Below are positions 22,958 to 47,801 of a stretch of DNA of 64,000 bases, piece after piece (within the stretch, counting starts at the first letter, position 1; each line of letters opens with the position of its first letter). A program made the position numbers and the translations under genes. Under the pieces are notes generated by a model. That model did not search any database and was not told the origin of the DNA. It saw nothing but the letters and a program-made list of their open reading frames with translations. Source of the DNA: Paraphysomonas bandaiensis (taxonomy: Eukaryota; Protista; Chrysophyceae); the NCBI GenBank assembly GCA_965644295.1, contig CBFFRP010000255.1:124001-188000 (forward strand), written 5' to 3'.

Positions 22958-25900
22958 TGTTGAGATCTGAAGATTCTATATACTTGCAATTGAGTGCAGT
23001 ATTATGTGAGATGCAAGGATCGAAAGATATATATGTAATTAGTACATTATATTATGTAGTATGAAACTGAAGTAGAAGTGGATGACTATACAGGATACGA
23101 TCACTGAGTGTGTGGTTTGTACACTATAGTAGTAAATGAATGGTGTTGAACACATCGAACACAACTTAGGTTCTTTATCATGTAATGTTTATAATTTCAT
23201 CTTTATCACATCTCAGTCTACCTTAATTGTGAATCCAGACAAGGGTATAAGTACGTGCTCCTATTTACGGACTTAGCAACAAAGATGATATGGGAATATG
23301 GATTGAGGACTCGAAGCGGAGAGGAGGTGTTCAAATGTCTACGACACTTGTGCGAGGTCCACTTAGTGAAGTACGAGGGGTGGAACCGTATAGTGGAGTA
23401 TCATGCCGATGGAGGATCCGAACTTATTAGTCAGCAGATAAGAGAGTATCTGTTGCAGCGATATGGGACTCGGGTGTCACATACAACACGAGACACGCCA
23501 GAGCTCAACGCGGTGTCTGAGAGGAAATTCCGAACAATTGGGGAGATGACACTGACGATGTTGACGGCATCTGGACTTCCAAAGTCGTTCTGGTTTGATG
23601 CTTATCAAACTGCATGTTACATTGTGCGACGAATGCCAACTCGGACGTGGCAAGGATGGATGTCTCCATATGAGTGTGTCCCAGGGGGAGCGTTCCCAGC
23701 CTATCGTGGCTACGGAAATGGGGGTGCAAAGCATATGTGCTAACACCCAAGGCCGACAGGAGGAAGGACTGGGAGGACAAAGCAATGACAGGTTATTTCA
23801 TAGGGTATCCAGCTGATCGAAAAGGATACAAGGTGCTAGTGGGGGACACCGTAGTACACTCTGTACATGTATTATTTGATGAATCGGTACCTGAGAGGTC
23901 TCAGGATTATTATAGAGAGCTGGAGGAGGCTCAAGTGGCTATAGATCCCGAGGCTCGTCAACCGGGTGAGTTTGAGTATCTTATCGGAAAGCACCATGAG
24001 GATGGTGGTCTGCTATACAAGACTAACAGAGTGGTGATAAGGAAGGGACTTATTGTGGGATACCGGTCGTTGGTTACTGGTAACCAGGTTCAAGTGGAGG
24101 ATAAAACTCCTATTCATATTGCTGACATCAAGAAGATGACAGAGGATCTTGCGCAGAGGGTGGTTAGGGCCAGAGTTACTGACAACCGTGACGGCGGTAT
24201 CAGCGGAGTGGTGCCACAGCAGTCGGAAAGTGGGCAGGTGCAGCCCCAGGCTGACTCAGCATTACCTTCGGGGGAAGGGACCCCTGCCGAGAATCATCCG
24301 CACGGCAAACGCGCAAGAACTCCAAGGACGGTAACGAATGTGTCGGTGTTAGGACAAATCCATCATTTGAGTGATGAGAGTGATGTGAGTGACCTTTTAC
24401 AGGAGGCAGACTCAGTGTGGATGTCAGCGGAAGAGTCGACAGTGCCTCAGACACATCGTGAGTCCTTGGAGAGTGCCGAGCACAGGGAGTGGAGACGAGC
24501 TCGCCGTGTAGAGCGAGAGGGTTTGGCGAAGCGAGATACCATGGAGGTGACTCGTATACCGGACGGAGTCGTCCCACTGCACTCCAAGTACGTCTATGGA
24601 AAGAAGTACGATAAGGAGGGAGAGGTCCGCCGATATAAGGCTCGTCTTGTAGCAATCGGTTGTGGACAGCAGTCGAGTGGTTGGGCGAACCATTTCGCAC
24701 CCGTTGTTAAGGGGGTAACAGTGCGACTGTTAATCGCCATAGCTTTCGTGATGAACATGGTAATTCATCAACTGGATGTGTCTATAACGCATTTCTATAT
24801 GCAGATATAGAGGGGGATGTATATATGAAGGCAACTCCGGACTTTCAGCTGCCTGAGGGGTACTGCTTTAAGTTGAAGAAGTCGTTATACGGGCTTCGGA
24901 GTTCCCCGCGGTCGTGGTGGAAAACATTGGATAAATTCATACGATCTATGCATTTTAAACCATGTGTATTAGACCCGTGTTTGTATTATCAGTATAAGGG
25001 CGATGAATTGATATTATTAACGATATATGTGGATGATATCCTAGTGTTAGGTCGTGATGTCAACATAGTGAAGGATATTAAAGCTCTCAACTGTGTGCCC
25101 GGTTTGATATGAAGGATATGGGCGAGATGGAACATTTTCTGAATGTTCGAGTCACAAGAACGCCAGAGTATATTCGTCTTGACCAATCAGTATATGCGGC
25201 TAAGATCTTAGAAAAGTTTGAAAAGTATCTTGGGCCACCGCGAAAGGTACGGAAGAGTCCTCTACCGGCGGAAGCAATGGATTTAGTGGCAAAAGGGGCG
25301 CGGCATGAGCATACCGAGGAGGAACAGCTTATAGTAGATAACTTCCCATATCGGCCGCTGATAGGTGCATTACTATATCTATCGATGAACACGAGGCCGG
25401 ATATTGCCTATGCAGTGGGAGTACTGTCTCGGTTCAGTAATAAGGTGAATATTGAAGTATGCAAGCTATTAACACATGTATGGCAATATATTCGTGGTTC
25501 TATTGACAAAGGGATTCAATATGGGAGTAGACGGTTCGACTTCCATATGTTTACTGACGCGGATTGGGCGGGAGATCAGCTCTCCAGGAAGTCCACGTCG
25601 GGGTACGTTGGGTTTGCAGCGGGAGGGCCTATAGTCTGGCAGTCCAAACTGCAGACGACAGTGGCAACGTCAAGCATGCAGTCTGAGTATCAGTGTATTT
25701 ACTCGGGTCTCCAAGAAGTGCTATGGGTTCGGGGGGTGACGGGTGAGATTAAGTTGAGGCTCATCAAACCCACACCATTCTTCATCGACAGTCAGAGTGC
25801 CCAGGATTTGGCCGAAAACCCAGTGTTTCACAAGAAGTCGAAGCACATTGAGATTAAGTATCACATGGTGAGAGAGCACGTGGATCCCAATCAGTTCAAT

Positions 25901-26490
25901 ACGATTAAGTTAGTGCATGTGCATACATCGCAACAAGCAGCAGATATTTATACAAAGTCATTGGTTGGTTTATCATATATGGAGCAGAGAAAGAGAAATC
26001 TTGGAGAGAAAGTTAAGAGTTCCACTGAAGTGATTAATGAGGGACCAAGGGATAAAAGAAGGCGCAAGTAGGTACTGAGTTTTTTAGACAGAGGTTTAGA
26101 CTTAGAGATGAGTCTATTTTACTGTCAAGAATTTTTTTTTATCTCAGGCATTCAATAGCTGGGAGGCGTCATAGTACAACACTCAATTGAGGGGGAGTGT
26201 TGAGATCTGAAGATTCTATATACTTGCAATTGAGTGCAGTATTATGTGAGATGCAAGGATCGAAAGATATATATGTAATTAGTACATTATATTATGTAGT
26301 ATGAAACTGAAGTAGAAGTGGATGACTATACAGGATACGATCACTGAGTGTGTGGTTTGTACACTATAGTAGTAAATGAATGGTGTTGAACACATCGAAC
26401 ACAACTTAGGTTCTTTATCATGTAATGTTTATAATTTCATCTTATCAGTTGAGAATAGTAAACCTTAGCAAATAATGTCAACTTCTGTTA
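22958..26490 (+). mobile_element. Ty1/Copia LTR retrotransposon, internally deleted (gag, protease and PBS missing)
   Basis: LTR segments 22958-23203 and 26198-26443 are identical; PPT TGAGGGGGAG at 26188-26197; domain order IN-RT-RNaseH; TSD GAGTT at 22953-22957 and 26491-26495. Confidence 0.93.
23255..26071 (+). pseudogene. Copia pol (integrase core, RT, RNase H) split across four ORFs by three frameshifts
   Basis: IN: ADGGSEL, PELNAVSER; RT: YKARLVA, LKKSLYGL, YVDD; RNaseH: TDADWAG, KSKHIEIKYH, QAADIYTK. Confidence 0.9.
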
Positions 26491-34637: not shown

Positions 34638-34990
34638 TTTGAACAGTTCCTAAGGTAGGATATGTTCTTTTATCAGTGTAATTATATCAAGGTAACTTTA
34701 CTATTACTGGACTTGGTATATATAATATGGCTTTCCCCCTGCCATATTGGCTTTTGAACATTTTTGTATGTTTAGATCATTAAAAAAGTTATATCGCAAC
34801 GCTAGATAGATGATAGATTATTATATTGAATACATAGCTGTATAGCTGTGCGTTGTCATGTAAAATATATCAACAATCGAATTGTATATTTCTTTCATAT
34901 CATGTTGAGTTTTGCTAAATCTTTCTCTGCCCTACGGTGGCAAATACCGTTCAACACAAAGTTTCACCTTATTAACCAGCTTTAAGCTCA

Positions 34991-37531
34991 ATGTCCCTAT
35001 TAAGGGTATGGATGAGTCATGTCAGTGTGCCTAGGGCCTCTTCTCCCTCTCTTCGGCCACATTTTGCTGATCACCTCGTCTCCGACAAATCTCTTGTTTT
35101 ACCACGTTGTACACGTTCCAAGCCTCACTGCCTGGCTTTGCGACTTCCACCCAACCTAACGGCTTCGGCTAAACCACGTGCCTGCACTAATGCAGCGCTT
35201 ACCGCATTCATATGCCATCACATCAGTAGACATCATAGTCTCACCTATCGAATTCTACGGTTACAACCACTCAAAACGTGGCTCGTGCGAGCAGGTCCAC
35301 GCAAAAGATCCTCTGGTGCTCTCCATATGGTCACAGAATACTCTCGAACCCTCACAACTGAGCTACAGGGCTGCCTCCTGATGTCCACACAAAACAACCC
35401 AACATGGTTTCTCTGTGGTCTATGCATCCAGCAGGTTACCCCCTCATTCTGTTCACCTATCACTCCCTCAGCCCATTCCTCTTATTGGACAGACACTGTA
35501 TTCCGCATACGGTATATTCGGCTACTGTACTACAGTGCCCTACAGGATGTATACCACACAAAAACGGTGCTAGCATGCGGCACACCACGTAGCCCCGGAC
35601 CCCATCAATACCCTACCAACACACACCCACTCAATCTTGCTCGTTATGAGTATATCACCTATGCAAGGCCCCAAAGTTCACGCTTAAGTCTCTTGCGTAA
35701 CAACACTCGGTTCACATACAGATATACACCAACACTCTTTAGAAGCAACTTCGACACAATTTCAATGAAACGTGAAACAAATTCCAACACTTCCAGAACC
35801 TTCACCCCGAAGTTTGTTCTTCCCCCCTCCTATCAACCAACCAACATTGATGCGCAGATCAATAATGCTATCAGAGAACAGAAGAAAGCCAAAGCTGACA
35901 CTCCCCAGCTACAGCTCCCATCGGTACGCACCTTTCTGGGATGGGAAAATGACCTACCTGTGGGAGAGTACAAAACACTCGTCCTTACAAACATAAAAGC
36001 TGCTGATGATGCCACCTTCCTGGGGATAACACACTACCTTATCCATGAGTTGGGGTTTCCCATTCAACCCCCTACCCCCCAAGACATCGCTACCTTCAGG
36101 GCAGCCAAGGATGCACGAACGTGTTCAGACTTACCCGCTCCCACAGCGAGTAGGGTAGTCCGAGCGTTCGACCTAGGCAGACCTGGGTACGAAGTCCGAC
36201 AGGGCATGGGAGCGAATGTTACCGCTGACTCATGTATGTACTCCTCCCCTCTATGCTTTGACCTCCATGTAGAAACGGGCACATCAGTCGATGACAAAGG
36301 CCTCCTTCGGACCGAACGCCGACATGTCCAGATATCACTTTTCCGAACGCCACGAGAACTCTTCGTGGGTCGCACCAAGGATGAGCCCTCGCTGATACCA
36401 GTGGCGGCTATATATGGGCTACATGCAGACTCAGCGCACACCAGACCTGCACATGCCTTTAGGTTACGAAACACGCTGGATATGCTTCTCCGAACGGGAG
36501 GTTTCCCCACGCCACCTCTATACGAAGTATTCTGGACTCTAACACACTATAGAGGCAAGACTCGAGCCACTGATAAAACATATAGGTTCTATCAGATTCT
36601 ATTACTCCACGATCCCATTCACGATCAGGATCTAAGAGCTAAATTCTATAAAGCACTCTTCAATAATGAAATAGGAGGACATGTCGAAATCAACCTCGGC
36701 TCACTCTGTTGTAGAATGGTCAGCACTGAAACACCCACGCAAAAGCAGTCCAACTGGACACCGTCTCAAGAACTCTTCCGCATCGCTGTCTGCTCTGAAA
36801 CACTCCTATCTCCCATCCAAGTCTGGCAAGCCTGTGAGGCCATAGGTATCCCATCCACGGACATAGAGGACATCATTTGGACCGCCCGCAACCCACTCAC
36901 AAGCGGGCGCAAAGAAAAAGAACGCTTAGTTGAACAAACCTACATTTACCTTGACGACAGGAATACCAAGATCAAACTCTGTTGGGAAATCTCACGCACA
37001 GGTATCGTGCCTTTACTGCGCAAAGCTCTGGGTGACGAAACTCTAAGGCTCCTCTATCACACCATAGCAGTCCCCCCTGGACTCCCTACTCAGCGGTTTC
37101 TATACGGCCTCCATAAGGCCCCAGACACAGCAACAAACGCCCCTCCCATAATACCGCCTCCAACGTCCCTTCAACCCTTCGGTCCAACTGTTGCTCCACA
37201 AATGCAGACCGATACACCGCGATCGTACACTCCCAAACGACAGCGACAGATGGACACATCCCCATCAACAGAGCCAGCACCAGCTCCCACCTGCCCAGAG
37301 CTCTGCGAAATAGCTCTACACATCGCTTCAGATCTTGTACCTCTGTCAAAAATCCATGCCATCCTCGCGCAAATGGAAAACGCGGTTGCAGCTCTCTATG
37401 AGATCGATGCTGGGGCGACTCTCACGGTACTTGATTACTATAAAAACAAGGTAGATCACAGTATCCCAGAAAGGTCCTCAGAAGAACACTCTCGGGTGGA
37501 CTCGGACATCTTCGGCTCCGACTCCAACTGA
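34991..37531 (+). CDS. LINE ORF1 (no domain recognised; possible start ATG 35765)
   Basis: 846-codon open frame inside the TSD-bounded element, upstream of and in frame with ORF2. Confidence 0.65.
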   Translation: MSLLRVWMSHVSVPRASSPSLRPHFADHLVSDKSLVLPRCTRSKPHCLALRLPPNLTASAKPRACTNAALTAFICHHISRHHSLTYRILRLQPLKTWLVRAGPRKRSSGALHMVTEYSRTLTTELQGCLLMSTQNNPTWFLCGLCIQQVTPSFCSPITPSAHSSYWTDTVFRIRYIRLLYYSALQDVYHTKTVLACGTPRSPGPHQYPTNTHPLNLARYEYITYARPQSSRLSLLRNNTRFTYRYTPTLFRSNFDTISMKRETNSNTSRTFTPKFVLPPSYQPTNIDAQINNAIREQKKAKADTPQLQLPSVRTFLGWENDLPVGEYKTLVLTNIKAADDATFLGITHYLIHELGFPIQPPTPQDIATFRAAKDARTCSDLPAPTASRVVRAFDLGRPGYEVRQGMGANVTADSCMYSSPLCFDLHVETGTSVDDKGLLRTERRHVQISLFRTPRELFVGRTKDEPSLIPVAAIYGLHADSAHTRPAHAFRLRNTLDMLLRTGGFPTPPLYEVFWTLTHYRGKTRATDKTYRFYQILLLHDPIHDQDLRAKFYKALFNNEIGGHVEINLGSLCCRMVSTETPTQKQSNWTPSQELFRIAVCSETLLSPIQVWQACEAIGIPSTDIEDIIWTARNPLTSGRKEKERLVEQTYIYLDDRNTKIKLCWEISRTGIVPLLRKALGDETLRLLYHTIAVPPGLPTQRFLYGLHKAPDTATNAPPIIPPPTSLQPFGPTVAPQMQTDTPRSYTPKRQRQMDTSPSTEPAPAPTCPELCEIALHIASDLVPLSKIHAILAQMENAVAALYEIDAGATLTVLDYYKNKVDHSIPERSSEEHSRVDSDIFGSDSN

Positions 37532-37579
37532 CTCCTACTGGACTGGGACACAACGAACATCAAACGTACACTCATAGAA

Positions 37580-40500
37580 GTGTCCGCAGCTGCTCACACG
37601 TGGTTATCCCCCAGTCCACACTTACATATCCATAGTTGGCCCTCACCTGACACAACGACCTTCGCCTGTAGCACCCACATGCGTCCACCACGTAAACCGC
37701 CAGACAAACAGTCGAGATCCACCAGTGTACATCCCACGAAAAGGCACCAAGGACCGCACTTTTCCTGTGATAATAGTGGTGATGGACCACGAAAACGGCC
37801 GGCCTCGACACAACGTAAGCGAAACAACCTCCGGCGGCTCAGTCGCAAACGAACTCTGCAACAATTTCGTGAAGGAACAATCCAGTCCCTCCCTCCACAC
37901 ATACAACGTCAACAGACACGAAACAAGCTCCGCATCCGTGCCCACAACAAGCAAGCATGGCGAGAGCATTTACAACACCTGGCACAACAGTGTGTAGACA
38001 CACACAACATCGTGACCACTCCTACACCTGACACAGCACCCACAGCTGTTACAGCACCCCCCCGTCCAGAAGACTCCACACATACTATTTGCCTCCCTCC
38101 GCCCACAGTGGAGGACGAACAAGAGAGAACAATCACTGACACAAGTGTACTGCCTCAACTATTTGTGCCGCACCCTCTGCCAGCTGCCTTCACGGACCCC
38201 GGACTGCAGAATTGGTCCTTCTACTCGCCCAGCGGTCTGTTAGCCATTGCCATACACGAAGAGGTGGTTCACAGTGTCATGTCCATGCTACAATCGAGGC
38301 ACGCTTTAGAACGCATAGAACAGCACCTCAGATGTTCGCTTGAGGAGGGGAAAATGCTGGTTGCACGTCACTACACACACACAGAATACAACAACACACC
38401 AATGGAGGGCTTCTGCGGACTAGCTGCTATTGCCGCAATATACCACAAACAACCGGAGGAGGACCACTACCCGTATTTAAATCCCGATGATCCAGCCTCG
38501 AAAGCAAAACTGCTCCAAGTCATTCAGACAAGCAGGACGGTACTTAGTACCTACACGCTCGCTGAAGCCAAGATGCTTAACTTTGCATGCATCCGGAAGA
38601 AGCTCCGACAGCAGCTAACAACGTACAACAAAGCACTACGCCGCAAACGACCAACTGCTGTCGGAATACCCCCAGAGCAATGGGGCTACACAGACATCAT
38701 AGCCCTCCTGGCAGAAACCCTGAGTATACGAATTCGTATCTGGCAAGATTCACCAGTGGACCTTGGCCACAACTGGGCGTACTGGTCTACCCACCATTCC
38801 TCCTTCCTTCCACAAACTCAATTCCTTCCATCTTATGATGTGTTTTGCTCCAACGACCACTTCTTCCTGGACACCAAATACCCGGTGGAGTTGGAACTAC
38901 ACGCGCTACTCGAGAGAATTCCTGACCTCGTCATCATGCGTCTCCAAAATGTGTTGCAATATCATTCCAAGGGAATGCAAGGAGTCCATCGTGCCAGGTC
39001 CATCAACCATCCCTCCCACGCCCTTCAGGGGAAGGAATTCTCTTCCGATAACAGCGGTGACGGACCCAGCAAATCCACCCACACATTACCCTTACCCACT
39101 AAGGATGCCACCACACCGTATGCAACTCTATTTGACTATTTCCCAGTCAAACGGAGGCCACCTACCACCAACCCTACTCAACTGAACACCATGGGAACTC
39201 CAGCATTAGCCCCAGACGGCCCATCCTCACACTCCACTACCACTCCTGACATCAGGCCGGATGCACTGCCCAAGGACATTGCCACACACCCCCGACACTA
39301 CACAGAGGGCTGGGGTCACACGCCCTTTCACTCCGATCTGCTGAACAACTGGGTTAGATATGATGAAACCCAAACCATTGCTGCCTCCCCACAGGGAAAC
39401 CTTTTAAAAGAAATATATGCACACATGCTATCCCCTGCCTGTACAGACATATGGGAAGGATTCATAGCCAAGGCTTCCAGGACGGACAACTATGATCTCA
39501 TGATATCATTCACGCTACCAGAGCACAAATTGGATACCACGCACAGCGCCCTACTAGTTGCCCAGCATCTCGCGAATGGCAACAAACCCTGGGCAGACTC
39601 CACTCATGTTGTATCTAGGCATGTGCGGACCCTTTGCCTGACAAAGGGTATTCCCTCAACAGCCACTGTTAGTCTCCGTAAGACACTCATGCAATATGAA
39701 TCCTCGACTCCACACACAGGACTACATCTAGACACGGAGGATTTCCAACTGCTACTCGATCTTCTCTCCATACCATACAGACTATGGGACGCTGTTCAAC
39801 CGCACCTGGCGCCTGGTTGGGCACAGCTGTCACCATTCTCCAGACAGGCACTAACAGTGCACGCTTCTACCAACACTGTGGTAACCCATGACATCATACG
39901 CAGCCAGCATGGGTTTCACATACTCAATGCAACAAATATCCCCACCTGCATCATGCACGCTCTAACACGGACTCAGGAGCGGCTATCCTGTTTTCTACAA
40001 CACCAGACCTCCAGACAGAGCACCAATATCCTCTGGACTTCTGAGCCGTCAACTGTACCACCTATGCTACATGAGCACAGAGAGCAACAGGAACAGAGGG
40101 AAGTAATTGCAGTCTCCTTGTCACCGAGAGCTCGACGTCAACTACGACAGATGAACCCCACGGACCGTCGACAACTCAGGCTCCATATGTGCGACATGAG
40201 CAGAGTCTACCGCCTCACCCTCAGACCCTCAGCCCTTCGCACACAACAACATATCCCTAGTGATGGGTACTGCGCATACAGCACACTCTATCATCTGCAC
40301 ATTCTTGCTTCAAGCAGGCGACACACTCGCTCCTGTCTGAAATTAGACCTCAAACAACGCAAGGACCGTCACACGCTAGCATCTTTCATAAATACATTAG
40401 GCACCCAAGCGTTCGACATAATGCAACGGGAGTGCATGGCCCATCACACACTTCAGCCACTACGACATAAGTTAGATCACGCACAGGCCGCACTTTTAAT

Positions 40501-43111
40501 ACCTACCAAAACAACATACACTACGGAAGACGACATAACTCACTGGCTCTCAGTGCGAGAGGTCCACCTTTTAGCCTCTACTATCAACCCCTGCACGACG
40601 TGGGCGCAAAATGGTAATTACCTCAGCATTGTAGGCATCCCTACTGACAAAGTAGCTTATAACATCGCATGGAAGGTGGACGAACTTAGGGACGCTATTC
40701 GTGATAACTACTACCATGTCATACTACAAGATGCTCACTACTTCCTCTTAGACCCTGCCGGTCTTTCTACTGCCCTAGACAACGCCCTACTATCTCTTGA
40801 AAACACCTTGGCCACCAGTATACTCTCAACGGCTGACCCCATCGCTCCACCTACACTCCCCGCGGACTCAATCACGAACAACAATAGGACATCAAAGATG
40901 ACCAGCACCAGAACAACCTCGTCAAGCAGCACCAAGTTAGCACGAACAAATCGACAGATTCTGCAGGCTTCAACCCCTGGAGCACTACCATCGCACAAGA
41001 AGATGCAGTTGAAACACGCCCAAACTGCGTTGACAAGTCGATGCCAGCCAACCCGGAAAGCCAAAAAGGTCGTAAATTACGATGAAAGTGACCAACCAAC
41101 GAACCTTCACAACTCACACCCAACCACGACCACACGAACGATCAGACCAACTCCAGCACTAGATACCACCGGCTGGGACAGGGACTGGTCAAGAAAGTTC
41201 TACATTGCGTACGCCGATAACACTGCCAAAGGACTATCCCTTTATGCGAAGAACACATTCCCAGCAGACGTCATCATTGCTGAGTACAAAGGCAAACGCT
41301 ATCCACTAACAAAGATGAGTCAGTCTACAAGGCGTTCTGATTACATAGTTCAAGACAGTACTGGTACCTTCGCAATAGATGGCTTTGACCAAGTCCGACA
41401 ATGTGTAACATGCGAAGCTGGGTATATTAATGACCCCCTAGCCACAAACATGGCTAATGTCAAGTTTGTCACGAAAAATAAACGCCTCTATGTCCGTACA
41501 ATACGTTCCATTGCTAAGGATGAAGAACTTCTCATCAACTACGGACATCATTATTGGTGTGATCAACGCTGGCCACTTGAGATATTAATCCAAGCCAGGG
41601 CTGCGTACGACAGCGACATAGGCGGTGCCAATATAGCAGTATGGGACAGACTCCTTGCAGACAAGAGTGGAACTCCTACAGAGACCTCCAGCAGCATCCC
41701 CAAGGATCCCTCGGGAGCAGCCATGGGACTCCGACTCTCCACATGGAACACAAATGGCAATCCGGCATCACACACAGGTAAAGCCCAAGCTATCATCCGA
41801 CACTTTAAGCGGCAAAAATTGGACGTGCTCCTATTACAGGATGTCCGTCTAACAGAAACTCAGGCCAACTTCTTCACGCGTATCATCGAAGATGCACTCC
41901 AGGGAACAAGAATATGCCTCTTCCTCAGCAAGCAGCCAAAACTGACTTCAAGAGACCCACTAATGGGGGGTACAGTAGTCATAATCAGCGAATACTGGAA
42001 GCGCCGTCTCGCCTTCACAAAGGCTGACTTTACGGGACTTGGTTTAGTGAGCCGACTAGAGTTCAAAACGTCGGTGGCGCACACCCTAGTACTAATAAGC
42101 GTCTATCTACCCCCGAAGCCATCCACGCCAGGCACTTGCACATTATGGAGCAAATTGACCAAGCTAGGGAGAGCGTCCCGTGGTATCTGTACTGCTGACC
42201 CCTACAAGCTCCTATGCAACATCCTTACGAAATGGGTCACTAAAGCCAGAGCCAAGGACCATACTGTCATTGTCGCCGGCGACTTCAATGGCTCCATGGA
42301 GACAAATCCTAAAGGCAGAGACATACGACCACTTGCCGACAAACTCCAACTGGCTGCACCACTCCATGAGCTTCTCCTACCCAGGAAAACATATCATACC
42401 TTCCACAGATTAGACAAAGGAATATCGCGGATCGATCATATTCTACACACGCCGTTACCTCCGAACATGTCTGTTACGGACACTGGCTGCCTTGACTCCC
42501 CCTCATTACTCGCAGCAGCCTTCGATCATCGACCGGTCTGGGTCGGTTTCACCGTACCAGTCAATCTTGACCCTCGACCACCTGAGTCGCACGTCGGATT
42601 CGCCCCCCGTCTCAATGTAAACCCGAAGGACTCCAAGGAAGTACAGGCATACACCGCAAGACTCCTCCAACTTCATGCACAACTACCACATTTAGACAAC
42701 GGATCGACTGCCATACTCCCTCCTGAGGTGGCAGCCAACAGACTAGCGGCCATCCATCACATAACCCTCCAGGCTTCGCTTGAGGCGAAGCGTCCTGCAT
42801 GTACACATAGCACACGCCTACACGAACGTTGTCAGCGCACACGCTCAAAGTTCAAGAATGGCTTTTCCCCGGAAATGAGAGTAATACAGGAAGGAATGCT
42901 CATGGTTTTGCGGATTATCCAAAAGATGTTCAATTCTGCTGGATACAAACGGCATGGATGGCGCGGCCCCCGGCAACCACCCCCACCCACGAAATCATCA
43001 CTGCATGGTTCGCCCGATGGGACTCCTATCTCAGGAGTTCTCAGGGTCACATCAAAGGCATATCGGACATCAACTTCTGGTGCAGCCACCGCAACGCGGA
43101 CCCACGAGTAA
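37580..43111 (+). CDS. LINE ORF2 N-terminal part: OTU-like modules, SET domain, AP endonuclease
   Basis: PMEGFCGLAAI..DHF and PSDGYCAYSTL..AHY (OTU-like); KGLSLYA..AEYKG..AGYINDP..DEELLINYG..YW (SET); STWNTNG, LQD, AGDFNG, SRIDH, FDHRPV (APE); first ATG at 37679. Confidence 0.85.
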   Translation: MSAAAHTWLSPSPHLHIHSWPSPDTTTFACSTHMRPPRKPPDKQSRSTSVHPTKRHQGPHFSCDNSGDGPRKRPASTQRKRNNLRRLSRKRTLQQFREGTIQSLPPHIQRQQTRNKLRIRAHNKQAWREHLQHLAQQCVDTHNIVTTPTPDTAPTAVTAPPRPEDSTHTICLPPPTVEDEQERTITDTSVLPQLFVPHPLPAAFTDPGLQNWSFYSPSGLLAIAIHEEVVHSVMSMLQSRHALERIEQHLRCSLEEGKMLVARHYTHTEYNNTPMEGFCGLAAIAAIYHKQPEEDHYPYLNPDDPASKAKLLQVIQTSRTVLSTYTLAEAKMLNFACIRKKLRQQLTTYNKALRRKRPTAVGIPPEQWGYTDIIALLAETLSIRIRIWQDSPVDLGHNWAYWSTHHSSFLPQTQFLPSYDVFCSNDHFFLDTKYPVELELHALLERIPDLVIMRLQNVLQYHSKGMQGVHRARSINHPSHALQGKEFSSDNSGDGPSKSTHTLPLPTKDATTPYATLFDYFPVKRRPPTTNPTQLNTMGTPALAPDGPSSHSTTTPDIRPDALPKDIATHPRHYTEGWGHTPFHSDLLNNWVRYDETQTIAASPQGNLLKEIYAHMLSPACTDIWEGFIAKASRTDNYDLMISFTLPEHKLDTTHSALLVAQHLANGNKPWADSTHVVSRHVRTLCLTKGIPSTATVSLRKTLMQYESSTPHTGLHLDTEDFQLLLDLLSIPYRLWDAVQPHLAPGWAQLSPFSRQALTVHASTNTVVTHDIIRSQHGFHILNATNIPTCIMHALTRTQERLSCFLQHQTSRQSTNILWTSEPSTVPPMLHEHREQQEQREVIAVSLSPRARRQLRQMNPTDRRQLRLHMCDMSRVYRLTLRPSALRTQQHIPSDGYCAYSTLYHLHILASSRRHTRSCLKLDLKQRKDRHTLASFINTLGTQAFDIMQRECMAHHTLQPLRHKLDHAQAALLIPTKTTYTTEDDITHWLSVREVHLLASTINPCTTWAQNGNYLSIVGIPTDKVAYNIAWKVDELRDAIRDNYYHVILQDAHYFLLDPAGLSTALDNALLSLENTLATSILSTADPIAPPTLPADSITNNNRTSKMTSTRTTSSSSTKLARTNRQILQASTPGALPSHKKMQLKHAQTALTSRCQPTRKAKKVVNYDESDQPTNLHNSHPTTTTRTIRPTPALDTTGWDRDWSRKFYIAYADNTAKGLSLYAKNTFPADVIIAEYKGKRYPLTKMSQSTRRSDYIVQDSTGTFAIDGFDQVRQCVTCEAGYINDPLATNMANVKFVTKNKRLYVRTIRSIAKDEELLINYGHHYWCDQRWPLEILIQARAAYDSDIGGANIAVWDRLLADKSGTPTETSSSIPKDPSGAAMGLRLSTWNTNGNPASHTGKAQAIIRHFKRQKLDVLLLQDVRLTETQANFFTRIIEDALQGTRICLFLSKQPKLTSRDPLMGGTVVIISEYWKRRLAFTKADFTGLGLVSRLEFKTSVAHTLVLISVYLPPKPSTPGTCTLWSKLTKLGRASRGICTADPYKLLCNILTKWVTKARAKDHTVIVAGDFNGSMETNPKGRDIRPLADKLQLAAPLHELLLPRKTYHTFHRLDKGISRIDHILHTPLPPNMSVTDTGCLDSPSLLAAAFDHRPVWVGFTVPVNLDPRPPESHVGFAPRLNVNPKDSKEVQAYTARLLQLHAQLPHLDNGSTAILPPEVAANRLAAIHHITLQASLEAKRPACTHSTRLHERCQRTRSKFKNGFSPEMRVIQEGMLMVLRIIQKMFNSAGYKRHGWRGPRQPPPPTKSSLHGSPDGTPISGVLRVTSKAYRTSTSGAATATRTHE

Positions 43112-46100
43112 TCCTGGGTTGGAACGAAAAGCAAGCCACCAAGAAAAACCTTCTCCGAATTGCCTTGCGACTGAGAGGACTTCTTCATGGAAGAGCCAGG
43201 ACAGAAATGCGGACTAGACTCACGGCTCGCACCAAGCAGATGGAGGCACTGCTACAGCAGAAAAGACTTCAAGCAATTCTTCAGAAAATTGGTCTCAAGG
43301 TCAAAACACCACTCCGACTTACCACGGTGAAAACAACGGACGGACACATCCTCACAACGCCGCAAGACATTCATGAAGGCATTAATGCGCACTTCCGTGA
43401 ACATCATGCCAAACCTCCTGGACTTGACCCTGTAGCACAACAGCTCCAGGATGACCCTACATGGTGGAAATCACTTCTTGATCCGGGCTCAGCGACATGC
43501 CAGGAACCACTCCACCCCCGCTCGAAAATTCCTCTTCCCCTGCAACTGGGGTTACGACGGGCCCTTTGTACCAAGACCACTCCGGCCATGGCAGCCACAC
43601 TCAAATCTACTCTTGCAAAAGACATCACCCAGGATGAATTCTACTGCACACTTCACTCTCTCTCCTTCAACCGCGCGCCTGGACCCTCAATGGTCTCCTC
43701 CAACATGGTCAAATCCTGGCCACCGGTAGTTCAGCGAGAGGCTTACATCCTCACCAGATCTCTCTGGAAACATAAACATGTGCCCATTTGGTGGAGAGAC
43801 AGGGTAATGTCTCCCATTCTCAAGAAACCAGGAGAATCCTCCCTCACTAATCTCCGACCGATTGGTCTGCTTGAAGTCAGTAGGAAAATATTAACAAGGA
43901 TAATCACTCATAGAATTCTTACCGTATGGGAGGAACAGAAAGTTTTGCATCCGTCCCAGCATGGTTATCGCTGGAGGAACGGGACGGACACAGCGATACT
44001 ACGGGTACTCGCGGCTGCAGAAGAAGCAAGACGAAAAGGCGACCAGCATATATGTACACTCTGGGACTTCAAGAAGGCCTTCGACTCAATTGCGCCTAAC
44101 CTCATGCGTCTCGCGTGGGCACGACTGGGCGTTCCGGACGATGTAGTTGACTGGTTTGGCAACTTAGATGCCGGCGGTCTAACATTTCCCTGGACACCAT
44201 TCATGGCAAACAACATAGAGCCACGTTCTCTCCTTGACCTCCTGTCCGCAGACGGCCACTTCATTGCACTATTCAGTCTGGGTTTCGAAGCCGAAAGGGG
44301 TATCACCCAAGGGGGCACAGAATCCACATGCGCCTGGGTGGCACTCTACGACATCCTTCTCACGTGGCTGGACATTGAACTGTCAACAACGAGTCCAACG
44401 TTACCAACTATTCAACTCACGACTCCGACTACCGGCGAAATAAAGATCTCCTTCGCGGATGATCTTAACACAATAGCTAAATCCATACACGCTGCCCAAC
44501 TCATTGCCCAACAAATATCTGCGTTCTGCGTACTTTCGGGAATGGAACTCTCTATCCCCAAAGTAGTTTGCACAGTGTTTCCGATCCTACAGGATTCCAA
44601 CAAGTCCTCCGACCCCATTGGCTACATCATTCTCTACGACTGGTCATGGCGCCCACACCCAGTCCCTATCCAAACATCACTAGAGTCGATACATTACCTC
44701 GGAGCAGACCTTCCTCTCACAATCACAGACAAGGCCTCCCATGACTGGTGTCTAAAATACCTGAAAGTCGTGACCACACACCTAGGGATCAAACAGGCCT
44801 CAGCCGGCTGTAAAGTCATGGTTATCGAGACCCAAATCATACCGACTTTGCTCTATAGAGCCACCAAAGCTTCATGGCCGCTACACTGGTACAGAGAAAT
44901 TGACGCTGCTTGCGCAACCCTCTACAGAAAGGCCCTCAGTCTAGGCCCTGGATACCCCACGGAACTGATCTACCTCTCACTCAAGCACAACGGATTAGGT
45001 ATGAAACGTTTCTCAGACTCAGCGCAGGAGCAAAAATGGGGATCTCTACAGCGCGCAATAACCCTCGGGGGAGAAGCAGGTCAAGCAGCACATTTTCTAC
45101 TCACTCAGACAACAGAGCCACAGCCCCAATACCACCACTATGTTCTCAGCCTCAGGGAATGGGGAACGGAATTGGGCCTTACCCTTCAGGAACCTGAGCC
45201 CCCCGAACCACAGGATGAACACATGCTGACCAACCTAAAACAAGAACTCGGCCTTAATAGTGTCCAACCAGATACTTTCAAGGCTATCTTCACAGATGGA
45301 TCATACACAGCCAGTGCGCTCTCCACTCGTCGCCTCACTCATGTCAATCCGCGAACCCGATGGACACACCGAGGAGGTGCAGCGGTCGTCTACTTACCCC
45401 CAGAAAATGCCTGGGAAGATGGTACAACCACAATACTACGACTAGATACACCCTTTCGTGACGTGCCCGGTTTGGACTCATACGCATATGAACTCATAGG
45501 CACAGCCATGGGGCTTATACTCTCAACACGTATTCCCGAACACATACGAAGCCACACAGACTGTCAGGCAGTGTGCACCCGCACTGAGGAAGCACTCTCC
45601 ACAAGACGCAGAGCTCTCGGTCACCGTGCAAAAGGGGTACTACTCGAAAGCATCGCAGCCAGCAGAGATTGCAAACGACAGGTGACCTGGGTGAGGTCTC
45701 ATCCCGAACGACGTACCACAGATGAAACGGAGTGGACGTTTGAGGACAAGGGCATCTATATTGCGGACGCAGTTGCGGGTGAAGACTGGCATGAAGTCGA
45801 TCGCATCCTTGGAAAAAATAACTACACTGTCTGCACAATTGCGATTGACAGTGCCATCGAACGCTTACTAACTGCTGGATTATGGCACTGGCGTATGCAC
45901 AGTACAAGACGGCCATACTACTCTAGCCCACTCCTTACTAATTTCCAGGATCTCTGCGACCTAAGGACACTTGAGAACTACACTTCAACCAGAGATCAAC
46001 GCTACGGACACAATCCTGATCGAGCGCCTGGCTACTGGACCAATAGCGGAGTACACCTCCCGCGCAAACTAGCTCAAGCGGATGGCAGTGCATCCAAAGA

Positions 46101-47013
46101 CAAACTCAGCTCAAATCTACGCCAAAGAATACTCAACACGGCACTGACATGGGACAAATCTTTCTGCATAGGGAGGAACCGGGCCAAAACCAAACAGGGA
46201 CTTGACCTGACCAAAGCCGCATGCTCTGACTGCGGGTTTCGACTAGATTCCCTAAAACATATGTGCCTCGACTGCACACATGAATCCATCACCCAAATAA
46301 GGGAAACTGCATTTCAATCGCATAAAAATGTGCTCCACGAAATACAGAGAACTCAGACCTTACCCAACTGGATCACATCTGCACTACGGAGACTCTCCAG
46401 CAGAGCCTGGAATCCCTCCATCCCACAGGTCGAGAGATACTGGACTGGAACCATCACAGCAGCCCAACTGGAAACGGTCTTCGAAGATGCCATACACAAC
46501 CACCTGACGGCACACAGTCTACGGAACCTAGAAACAGCGGTTATTAATCTCCTGCAACCGCTTTACACTGCAGCGAAGCTTATGCTACAGGATCGCGGTT
46601 GTCGCTATATCACCATGTCCAAAAGGCCGCCCAGACTACTCCCGAGACCCCGTCCGAAACGCAGTCAGTCAAGACAACGTCCGAGAGTCCTTCGACTACT
46701 AGGGGTCCAACGAAGACCCCCCACAGCGTCCCCGACTCCAGACACACGTGCACACCTCACAGGTCCTACCCGACAGAGCACTGGACTGCCCAGACCTCCA
46801 CAACGCCGACGGCTTCGACAACTCTATCTACACCCGCGGCCCCACAGGAGCACAGTAACACAGACTACAAACCCAACTCCTCCTCCCAACAATCCCCACC
46901 ACTCTCAACCCACACATCTGGAACTAGGTGCACTCAGGACCCTAATCCAGAACGCTGAGCCCCCTCCAACACCAATGGAGACCCATCCCAAAGGGAGACC
47001 CCCAGATCAATAG
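42829..47013 (+). CDS. LINE ORF2 C-terminal part: reverse transcriptase, RNase H, CCHC finger
   Basis: APGPS, LRPIGLL, QHGYR, DFKKAFDSI, GITQG, FADD, YLG; IFTDGS, YELIG, HTDC, WVRSH, ADAVA; CSDC...HMCLDC; joined to the upstream ORF by a -1 shift near 42967. Confidence 0.93.
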   Translation: MSAHTLKVQEWLFPGNESNTGRNAHGFADYPKDVQFCWIQTAWMARPPATTPTHEIITAWFARWDSYLRSSQGHIKGISDINFWCSHRNADPRVILGWNEKQATKKNLLRIALRLRGLLHGRARTEMRTRLTARTKQMEALLQQKRLQAILQKIGLKVKTPLRLTTVKTTDGHILTTPQDIHEGINAHFREHHAKPPGLDPVAQQLQDDPTWWKSLLDPGSATCQEPLHPRSKIPLPLQLGLRRALCTKTTPAMAATLKSTLAKDITQDEFYCTLHSLSFNRAPGPSMVSSNMVKSWPPVVQREAYILTRSLWKHKHVPIWWRDRVMSPILKKPGESSLTNLRPIGLLEVSRKILTRIITHRILTVWEEQKVLHPSQHGYRWRNGTDTAILRVLAAAEEARRKGDQHICTLWDFKKAFDSIAPNLMRLAWARLGVPDDVVDWFGNLDAGGLTFPWTPFMANNIEPRSLLDLLSADGHFIALFSLGFEAERGITQGGTESTCAWVALYDILLTWLDIELSTTSPTLPTIQLTTPTTGEIKISFADDLNTIAKSIHAAQLIAQQISAFCVLSGMELSIPKVVCTVFPILQDSNKSSDPIGYIILYDWSWRPHPVPIQTSLESIHYLGADLPLTITDKASHDWCLKYLKVVTTHLGIKQASAGCKVMVIETQIIPTLLYRATKASWPLHWYREIDAACATLYRKALSLGPGYPTELIYLSLKHNGLGMKRFSDSAQEQKWGSLQRAITLGGEAGQAAHFLLTQTTEPQPQYHHYVLSLREWGTELGLTLQEPEPPEPQDEHMLTNLKQELGLNSVQPDTFKAIFTDGSYTASALSTRRLTHVNPRTRWTHRGGAAVVYLPPENAWEDGTTTILRLDTPFRDVPGLDSYAYELIGTAMGLILSTRIPEHIRSHTDCQAVCTRTEEALSTRRRALGHRAKGVLLESIAASRDCKRQVTWVRSHPERRTTDETEWTFEDKGIYIADAVAGEDWHEVDRILGKNNYTVCTIAIDSAIERLLTAGLWHWRMHSTRRPYYSSPLLTNFQDLCDLRTLENYTSTRDQRYGHNPDRAPGYWTNSGVHLPRKLAQADGSASKDKLSSNLRQRILNTALTWDKSFCIGRNRAKTKQGLDLTKAACSDCGFRLDSLKHMCLDCTHESITQIRETAFQSHKNVLHEIQRTQTLPNWITSALRRLSSRAWNPSIPQVERYWTGTITAAQLETVFEDAIHNHLTAHSLRNLETAVINLLQPLYTAAKLMLQDRGCRYITMSKRPPRLLPRPRPKRSQSRQRPRVLRLLGVQRRPPTASPTPDTRAHLTGPTRQSTGLPRPPQRRRLRQLYLHPRPHRSTVTQTTNPTPPPNNPHHSQPTHLELGALRTLIQNAEPPPTPMETHPKGRPPDQ

Positions 47014-47801
47014 CGCCGGTGAGTCCACGGACACACGATAAAGGCGAATTTCATATCACACAAAAGAACGGAAGTGGTTGCACCTTGGTGCTTGCGGCGA
47101 CGCACAAGCAGCTTTCGTAGCGTTAAATAGTAGGATAAAAGAGTTTGTATTGATTAGTTACGGGTAGTGGTCTAACTAGTATGACTAGCATTCTTCTAGC
47201 CACTAATTGATGCAAGGTCTCAACGCCTATTGCTAAATAATCAGACATTCACTACTGAGTTTTGCTGTTTAAGCAATTAAAAGCTGTAATTCGAAGATAT
47301 TGGAATTATGACGGTTACTGGAGAATACAGTAGTGATGAGCTGTATTATGAGAAGTGATATCATGACGATGTAAGATCGTACTAGAAATGAGTGGTAGTA
47401 GAGATAACGTGATATATTGTTTATTTATTATAATCTTCTCTTATATTAACTTGATTAATGAGTGAATACACGTCCAGTTAACTTAGTAATCATCCAATCG
47501 TGTCATAACTTGACATATCAATCGCTGATCAACTCCCGTATCTTCAATCGTCATGACACTTCAGTTTCACAGTTATAGCTGTGTTGTACTTTACAGTTTT
47601 ACGCATTGTATTTGACGTACTTCACAGTTCTATCTTAGAGAAAGATACGTATTCCAACAGAACGCTCCTGTCGCCGACATTTCTAAAGGCAACATTTCGC
47701 AGAAATATGTATTATACCTTATTGTCATGTAATAAACATAGGCACATGGCACATGTATAACGGACAAACTAAACTACTGAAAAAACTAAATAATAACTGC
47801 C

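What the first reader, a model, noticed from the sequence alone, without database searches (positions are those of the whole stretch)
34917..47255. Giant full-length LINE carrying its own chromatin/ubiquitin toolkit (OTU-like proteases + SET methyltransferase + APE-RT-RNaseH)
Seen: a 12.3-kb element exactly bounded by an 11-bp TSD, with a short ACT tail, encoding OTU-like x2-3, SET, APE, RT, RNase H and CCHC in that order. Established: typical LINE ORF2 is APE-RT(-RNH); protease accessory domains occur in a few clades (Ulp1 in NeSL, Josephin-like in Dualen). I know of no LINE with OTU and SET fused in front of APE. Inference: the element may deubiquitinate or self-process and methylate lysines at the integration site or on host proteins, acting as a transposon-encoded anti-silencing or chromatin-writing system.
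Basis: partly seen in the sequence, partly recalled or inferred. Interest (0 to 1): 0.92.

Follow-up and report, generated by a model that had tools for sequence, protein, structure and literature searches.

The report
Giant LINE with SET and OTU
This is a real, recently active 12.3-kb jumping gene (a LINE) of a marine protist whose giant copying protein also carries a lysine-methyltransferase (SET) domain and three domains shaped like ubiquitin-removing (OTU) proteases; a similar design is already described in cryptophyte algae, so this is a new variant whose extra enzymes are untested.

Summary
Confirmed: a full-length, young, multi-copy LINE (34917-47255, 11-bp TSD). ORF2 (~3,160 codons; the window's frameshift is a one-base-short C run absent from short-read contigs) reads OTU-like x3, SET, APE, RT, RNase H, CCHC, with no RLE. 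SET passes the Pfam cut-off. The OTU call has no Pfam hit; it rests on conserved Cys/His and a confident model of repeat 3 whose top fold matches are all OTU. Repeat 2 lacks the Cys. Repeats 1, 3 and SET are conserved almost as well as RT in a sister family with saturated dS.

It belongs to a wider RT clade (SH-aLRT 100, separate from Dualen-like RTs) that shuffles SET, OTU and Ulp1 to either end of ORF2. Ambal/Repbase could not be checked.

Extra: ORF1 and ORF2 are in frame across one UGA-C followed by a conserved stem, a candidate readthrough signal. Enzyme activities and chromatin role are inferred only. The scan noted this family, and the junction, before on other DNA of this genome.

The parts
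34906..34916 (.). left copy of 11-bp target-site duplication
34917..34990 (+). 5' leader; same 5' end (element position 1-3) in at least 7 other copies
34991..37531 (+). ORF1, 846 aa, no Pfam or Atlas match; residues ~305-846 are 70% identical in a sister family; true start uncertain
37529..37618 (+). candidate readthrough cassette: in-frame UGA-C, then a 9-bp stem (arms 37539-37547 and 37610-37618) kept intact in the sister family while the loop diverged
37532..47013 (+). ORF2 (~3,160 codons after the UGA; first ATG 37679); split in this assembly by a one-base-short C run at 42967-42971
38369..38899 (+). OTU-like repeat 1 (Cys295, His443; numbering from 37532); fold not modelled separately
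39482..39949 (+). OTU-like repeat 2, degenerate (no Cys at the catalytic position in this family)
40226..40777 (+). OTU-fold repeat 3 (Asp911, Cys914, His1069); AlphaFold pLDDT 85, top fold matches all OTU
41204..41623 (+). minimal SET domain (no pre- or post-SET zinc), motifs SDY, YIND, ELLINYG..YW
41732..42556 (+). APE endonuclease
43576..44967 (+). non-LTR reverse transcriptase (FADD at 44452)
45283..45783 (+). RNase H with D-E-D-H-D
46222..46275 (+). CCHC zinc finger; no restriction-like endonuclease motif downstream
47014..47255 (+). 3' UTR ending in two ACT units (last T shared with the TSD)
47256..47266 (.). right copy of 11-bp target-site duplication

Best explanation
Shown: an autonomous, recently active APE-type LINE that inserts with the hallmarks of target-primed reverse transcription (variable 5' truncation, 11-13-bp TSDs, fixed 3' end). 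Its single ORF2 carries, under purifying selection, two Cys/His-intact OTU-like domains, one degenerate repeat and a SET domain. Inferred: ORF2 is made at low level as an ORF1-ORF2 fusion by UGA readthrough. Because the extra domains travel in cis with the RNP, the OTU domains most likely act as ubiquitin isopeptidases and SET as a SAM-dependent lysine methyltransferase on chromatin or silencing proteins at the insertion site or on new copies, easing integration or keeping copies expressed.
For: TSDs and truncations; 25 loci with OTU3-SET at 96-100% and several diverged families with the same module. Against the sister family with saturated dS, repeat 1, repeat 3 and SET keep 67, 66 and 69% identity, close to RT (74%) and above the N-terminal linkers (44-46%); dN/dS 0.07 for repeat 1, 0.12 for SET. 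Cys in 21 of 25 and His in 26 of 27 clade repeats; SET C-terminal Tyr in 39 of 39. OTU fold. Sister lineages carry Pfam-grade OTU and Ulp1 (SUMO-type) isopeptidases with SET at the C-terminus instead: position-independent, repeated pairing of ubiquitin-like isopeptidases with SET fits a role on host marks better than cutting a polyprotein. Other transposons have captured SET (HarbingerS, MuDR; PMC12730594) and OTU plus SET (Helentrons; PMC4067079).
Against: No activity or substrate data. The SET N-H motif is N-D here and D-E in 11 of 39 relatives, which could weaken SAM binding. OTU fold scores are modest (Z up to 7.5, Foldseek E 0.03) and only repeat 3 was modelled. The abundant deleted subfamily lacks the Cys half of repeat 1, so that repeat is dispensable at least in cis. 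Readthrough rests on two families, without compensatory base changes, and an AUG lies 42-49 codons after the stop in both.
Confidence: 0.45

Rival explanations
1. The extra enzymes act on the element's own protein: the OTU-fold domains cleave the ~4,000-aa polyprotein and/or strip ubiquitin to save it from the proteasome (as viral OTU-fold proteases do; own knowledge), and SET methylates the element's own or non-histone proteins.
For: Very long protein with low-complexity linkers between domains; the best fold matches include viral OTUs; in-frame ORF1-ORF2 fusion would suit processing.
Against: Sister lineages place the proteases after the CCHC finger and combine OTU with Ulp1 in varying order and number; I did not look for or find a conserved cleavage site.
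Confidence: 0.28
2. The domains are mainly readers or tethers: a weakened SET binds histone tails and the OTU repeats bind ubiquitinated nucleosomes, steering insertion rather than changing marks.
For: Repeat 2 has lost its Cys yet is 54% conserved; the SET cofactor motif is non-canonical; a few relatives lack the Cys.
Against: Cys, His and the SET tyrosines are kept across RTs only 30-45% alike, more than a binding role usually needs.
Confidence: 0.2
3. The domains are captured host sequence hitch-hiking without function, or the element is a chimera or assembly artefact.
For: The window copy has a frameshift, and the assembly has many homopolymer indels.
Against: Many near-identical copies, natural open frames of 2,800-3,700 aa, independent metagenome contigs with the same order, strong purifying selection.
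Confidence: 0.03

Closest known systems
Dualen/RandI LINEs, especially cryptophyte Dualen-1_GCr (PMC5029228)
   Same: Giant polyprotein with SET, a cysteine protease, APE, RT, RNase H and CCHC; Dualen-like RTs are the nearest long relatives found.
   Different: No RLE after the CCHC; OTU-fold rather than C48 protease; separate ORF1; RT falls in a separate, strongly supported clade.
Helentrons / proto-Helentrons (PMC4067079)
   Same: Transposons carrying OTU-like proteases, SET (oomycetes) and an APE domain.
   Different: Rolling-circle DNA transposons; OTU and SET are separate ORFs, and there is no RT.
Ambal clade (Repbase; listed in PMC5753468)
   Same: From memory only: long stramenopile (diatom) LINEs with two ORFs and APE-RT-RNase H, no RLE.
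   Different: No Ambal sequence or description was reachable, so relationship and accessory domains could not be compared.
NeSL and Utopia-1_TSP (PMC4640811)
   Same: Non-LTR elements with an N-terminal cysteine protease (Ulp1-like).
   Different: RLE-type, target-specific, no APE and no SET.
HarbingerS and MuDR of Phytophthora (cited in PMC12730594)
   Same: Transposon-borne SET domains in stramenopiles.
   Different: Cut-and-paste DNA transposons.
OTU deubiquitinases (OTUB1, nairovirus vOTU, Wolbachia OTU)
   Same: Fold of repeat 3 over residues 1-179 with Cys and His motifs.
   Different: 9-16% identity, no Pfam OTU hit; ubiquitin-binding surface and specificity not assessed.

Membership tests
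APE-type non-LTR retrotransposon (LINE) | APE plus non-LTR RT in ORF2 | tested here: met
   Pfam hits above cut-off; best solved relatives are L1 ORF2p and R2
APE-type non-LTR retrotransposon (LINE) | TSDs, 5' truncation, simple 3' tail, no LTRs | tested here: met
Dualen/RandI | both APE and a C-terminal restriction-like endonuclease | tested here: not met
   No PD..(D/E)xK motif seen by inspection after the CCHC in the element or its clade, while P0022, P0023 and P0025-P0029 show it
Dualen/RandI | RT inside the Dualen clade | tested here: not met
   Own clade SH-aLRT 100, outside the Dualen-like group (92); sister relation only 81; references are database proteins assigned by domain content, not named Repbase entries
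Ambal | RT inside the Ambal clade | not testable with these tools
   No Ambal sequence or descriptive paper reachable
L1/Tx1, RTE, I and CR1 groups | RT placement with those groups | tested here: inconclusive
   Falls outside all 21 shorter LINE RTs retrieved, but these are unnamed and the tree is a quick one
OTU protease superfamily | OTU fold | tested here: met
   Repeat 3 only: top 18 VIA hits and top 26 Foldseek hits are OTU, Atlas TM 0.53 to an OTU cluster; individual scores modest
OTU protease superfamily | catalytic Cys and His | tested here: met
   Repeats 1 and 3 yes, repeat 2 no Cys
OTU protease superfamily | Pfam PF02338 profile match | tested here: not met
   No hit; hhalign to sister-clade OTUs only 25% probability, on the Cys motif
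OTU protease superfamily | isopeptidase activity | not testable with these tools
   needs an assay
SET lysine methyltransferases | SET profile above cut-off | tested here: met
   PF00856 35.5 bits against cut-off 22.4
SET lysine methyltransferases | canonical cofactor and catalytic motifs | tested here: inconclusive
   Asn and both Tyr kept; N-H is N-D; first GxG motif is GLS
SET lysine methyltransferases | methyltransferase activity and histone substrate | not testable with these tools
   needs an assay

The most novel reading that the evidence does not exclude
An uncatalogued clade of giant aquatic-protist LINEs, separate from Dualen, that carries and reshuffles active ubiquitin/SUMO isopeptidases and a SET methyltransferase to rewrite chromatin at its own insertions, and whose family here makes ORF2 by virus-like UGA readthrough.
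Probability: 0.25. Interest if true: 0.85.

Novelty: new variant of a known kind. Interest (0 to 1): 0.62.

Why it matters
Transposon-borne SET and ubiquitin-like proteases have been noted in several unrelated elements, but I found no test of what they do. Here they sit in cis on an intact, active LINE polyprotein, in small separable domains, with natural deletion variants and sister lineages that permute them. That makes it directly testable whether a retrotransposon writes or erases chromatin marks for its own benefit. The clade may need its own place in LINE classification. A confirmed UGA readthrough would add to the ORF2 translation modes described for LINEs (SART1 coupling, L1 reinitiation, 2A peptides; PMC5972666).

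Tried and rejected
Single-sequence AlphaFold of the 1,167-aa accessory region failed (pLDDT 33). Pfam on isolated repeats, ORF1, RNase H and CCHC gave nothing useful. A PDB sequence-profile hit to a MINDY pseudo-deubiquitinase (E 0.075) vanished with the deeper alignment, and no MINDY entry is listed in the fold searches; rejected. A profile search for short relatives of the repeat found only a near-identical fragment. No relatives in viral contigs. No Rfam family in the element. ORF1: no Pfam, Atlas or distant homologue except a weak hit in a 51%-RT family. A programmed frameshift at 42967 was rejected, because short-read contigs and most copies have the open frame. The same holds for the C7 run near 38057, short by one in several other copies but unbroken in an independent run and in the sister family. 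Host identity could not be fixed here: the 18S search failed and exact look-ups were blank. Dualen membership was rejected (no RLE).

Full report
OBSERVATION. The element spans 34917-47255 and is flanked exactly by an 11-bp duplication at 34906-34916 and 47256-47266. It stands out by higher G+C and a C- and A-rich + strand. The host is a 62.6-Mb eukaryote found in cultures and marine metagenomes. Earlier scan notes call it a Paraphysomonas-like chrysophyte; I could not test that. At least 15 other loci match over 5 kb at 98-100% (a lower bound). Four truncated or derivative copies have their own 12-13-bp TSDs and end at the same base, always followed by T. This is the signature of recent target-primed reverse transcription. 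The tail is only two ACT units.

READING FRAMES. ORF1 runs 34991-37531 (846 aa). ORF2 appears as two pieces in the window, split at a run of five C (42967-42971). Most copies have six, as do the contigs of all three short-read runs, while the run with many one-base deletions is mixed. Natural copies have open frames of 2,823 and 3,021 aa, and sister families 2,795 and 3,731 aa; an independent metagenome contig encodes a 3,175-aa relative. So ORF2 is one frame of about 3,160 codons, and the break is most likely an assembly error.

CORE DOMAINS. SET, APE and RT pass Pfam cut-offs. The RT profile's best solved relatives are L1 ORF2p and R2. RNase H has no Pfam hit but keeps D-E-D-H-D across the clade. 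A CCHC finger follows, and by inspection no restriction-like endonuclease motif lies behind it, whereas Dualen-like proteins in the same search show one.

OTU-LIKE REPEATS. Three repeats of about 175 aa precede SET. Pfam misses them and profile-profile comparison with canonical OTUs of sister elements is weak. An iterated profile gathered 27 repeats from the clade, with Cys in 21 of 25, Trp in 22 of 27 and His in 26 of 27 (rows were picked by that profile and some are close kin). AlphaFold on this alignment gave pLDDT 85 and pTM 0.85 for repeat 3. The first 18 VIA-align rows are all OTU domains over residues 1-179 (Z 5.8-7.5), the first 26 Foldseek rows are OTU (best E 0.03), and the best Atlas match is an OTU cluster (TM 0.53). 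Each score is modest; their agreement makes the OTU fold likely. Repeats 1 and 3 keep Cys and His, repeat 2 has lost the Cys. Only repeat 3 was modelled.

SET. It is a minimal SET without flanking zinc domains; its best PDB matches are weak (KMT2C/D, E 0.003), so no substrate can be inferred. Across 39 clade SETs the C-terminal Tyr is invariant, the inner Tyr is kept in 37, and the N-H motif is N-D, N-E or D-E. Activity is plausible, not shown.

SELECTION. Against the sister family L057, where dS is saturated, identity is 67% (repeat 1), 54% (repeat 2), 66% (repeat 3), 69% (SET), 74% (APE, RT) and 44-46% in the linkers between the accessory domains; dN/dS is 0.07, 0.14 and 0.12 for repeats 1, 2 and SET (rough at saturation). 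The 98%-identical subfamily also shows ratios near 0.2 for repeats 2 and 3, on few changes. A protein from an MMETSP transcript covers all three repeats and SET of the sister family, and polyA metatranscriptome contigs lie on parts of the element, mostly from short derivatives (DNA carry-over not excluded).

THE WIDER CLADE. Searches returned about 35 related RTs from marine and lake metagenomes. One branch has OTU-like x1-3, SET, APE, RT, RNase H, CCHC. Others move the cassette: RNase H-APE-RT followed by OTU, SET and Ulp1 in three different orders, with Pfam OTU and C48 above cut-off, or SET before the OTU-like repeat. Our repeat 3-SET stretch aligns with an OTU-SET tandem of one of them. 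All form one clade (SH-aLRT 100) apart from RLE-bearing Dualen-like RTs and 21 shorter LINE RTs; the sister link to Dualen is weak (81) (quick trees, unnamed references, midpoint root, near-duplicate loci left out).

ORF1-ORF2 JUNCTION. ORF1 and ORF2 are in the same frame, separated by one UGA followed by C. In the sister family the peptides on both sides of the stop are conserved with synonymous changes, the frame stays open, and the first AUG is not at a homologous place. A 9-bp stem begins 8 nt after the stop, with a 62-nt loop. Both arms are identical in the sister family while the loop has diverged; of 12 stems of 8 bp or more in the element it is the only one fully kept, and the junction is in the top 1.1% of 51-nt windows for identity. 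One sister copy has both ORFs in a single open frame (G000:C116). A third lineage also has an in-frame UGA-C with a stable hairpin (L026), while others overlap their ORFs in different frames. The layout resembles alphavirus UGA-C readthrough (own knowledge). The review on reinitiation lists stop-start coupling, reinitiation and 2A peptides for LINEs, not readthrough (PMC5972666). There is no compensatory change, and reinitiation at a downstream AUG remains possible; I put readthrough at about 0.6.

DERIVATIVES. A roughly 9.4-kb subfamily joins an 81%-identical 5' end, open from the same first ATG, to the second half of repeat 1; it lacks the ORF1 core, the stop and the Cys of repeat 1. About 42 loci start at that junction against about 12 of the full type, and shorter forms jump from 39075 or 39643 to the 3' end. 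Whether it borrows ORF1 in trans is unknown.

MECHANISM. Mobility by TPRT is inferred from standard LINE biology plus the insertion hallmarks. For the accessory domains I favour isopeptidase plus methyltransferase action on chromatin or silencing proteins, delivered in cis (0.45), over self-processing or self-protection (0.28) and non-catalytic tethering (0.20). The main argument is comparative: the clade repeatedly pairs SET with ubiquitin- and SUMO-type isopeptidases regardless of position. No step of this is shown.

PRIOR ART. Dualen-1_GCr encodes SET, C48, APE, RT, RNase H, CCHC and RLE (PMC5029228). Helentrons carry OTU-like proteases and, in oomycetes, SET (PMC4067079). HarbingerS and MuDR carry SET (PMC12730594). 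NeSL and Utopia carry Ulp1 (PMC4640811). I found no paper on OTU plus SET in a LINE, but Repbase Reports, including the Ambal description, are not searchable here. Earlier agents of this scan reported the same family on other DNA of this genome, and first readers flagged the junction; these notes are not counted as evidence.

VERDICT. Real and well supported as an architecture; a new variant of a known kind (giant protease- and SET-bearing LINEs), possibly an unnamed clade; function untested. Interest 0.62.

Noticed in passing
window 37529-37618: Conserved in-frame UGA-C plus 9-bp stem between ORF1 and ORF2, a candidate programmed readthrough signal.
   Followed up: partly
L005 627-9982 (also L006, L007; G000:C440): Abundant single-ORF deletion subfamily lacking the ORF1 core and half of repeat 1; its first 190 codons stay open at 81% identity (dN/dS 0.54), so ORF1's odd N-terminus may be coding.
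   Followed up: partly
window 39075 and 39643 (read contigs): Short non-autonomous derivatives that join these points to the element's 3' end near 46920; they dominate the polyA RNA contigs.
   Followed up: no
window 37682-37708 and 46990-47010: A PPRKPPDK motif near the start of ORF2 is conserved in both families and in the deletion subfamily; a similar GRPPD ends ORF2, and several relatives end in PPD or KPP.
   Followed up: no
P0014, P0047, P0055 (L027, L058): Lake-metagenome LINEs with RNase H in front of APE and a C-terminal OTU/SET/Ulp1 cassette in three different orders.
   Followed up: partly
P0019, P0021, P0022, P0027, P0029: Dualen-like proteins carrying a PCIF1-type domain (PF12237), with PHD in some: another modifying or reading module on LINEs.
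   Followed up: no
L049 2-15160: A 5,053-aa open frame with SET, OTU-like, APE, RT and RNase H, plus a weak Pol beta-barrel hit near the N-terminus.
   Followed up: no
window 23195-26068: Ty1/copia fragments (SH3-like and RVT_2 hits).
   Followed up: no
P0181 (MBQ27686.1): A relative of this eukaryotic LINE is filed in a 'Nitrospiraceae bacterium' MAG, probably binning contamination.
   Followed up: no
L003 228-406; L005 99-163: Very short 3'-end copies (179 and 65 bp) inserted near longer copies.
   Followed up: no
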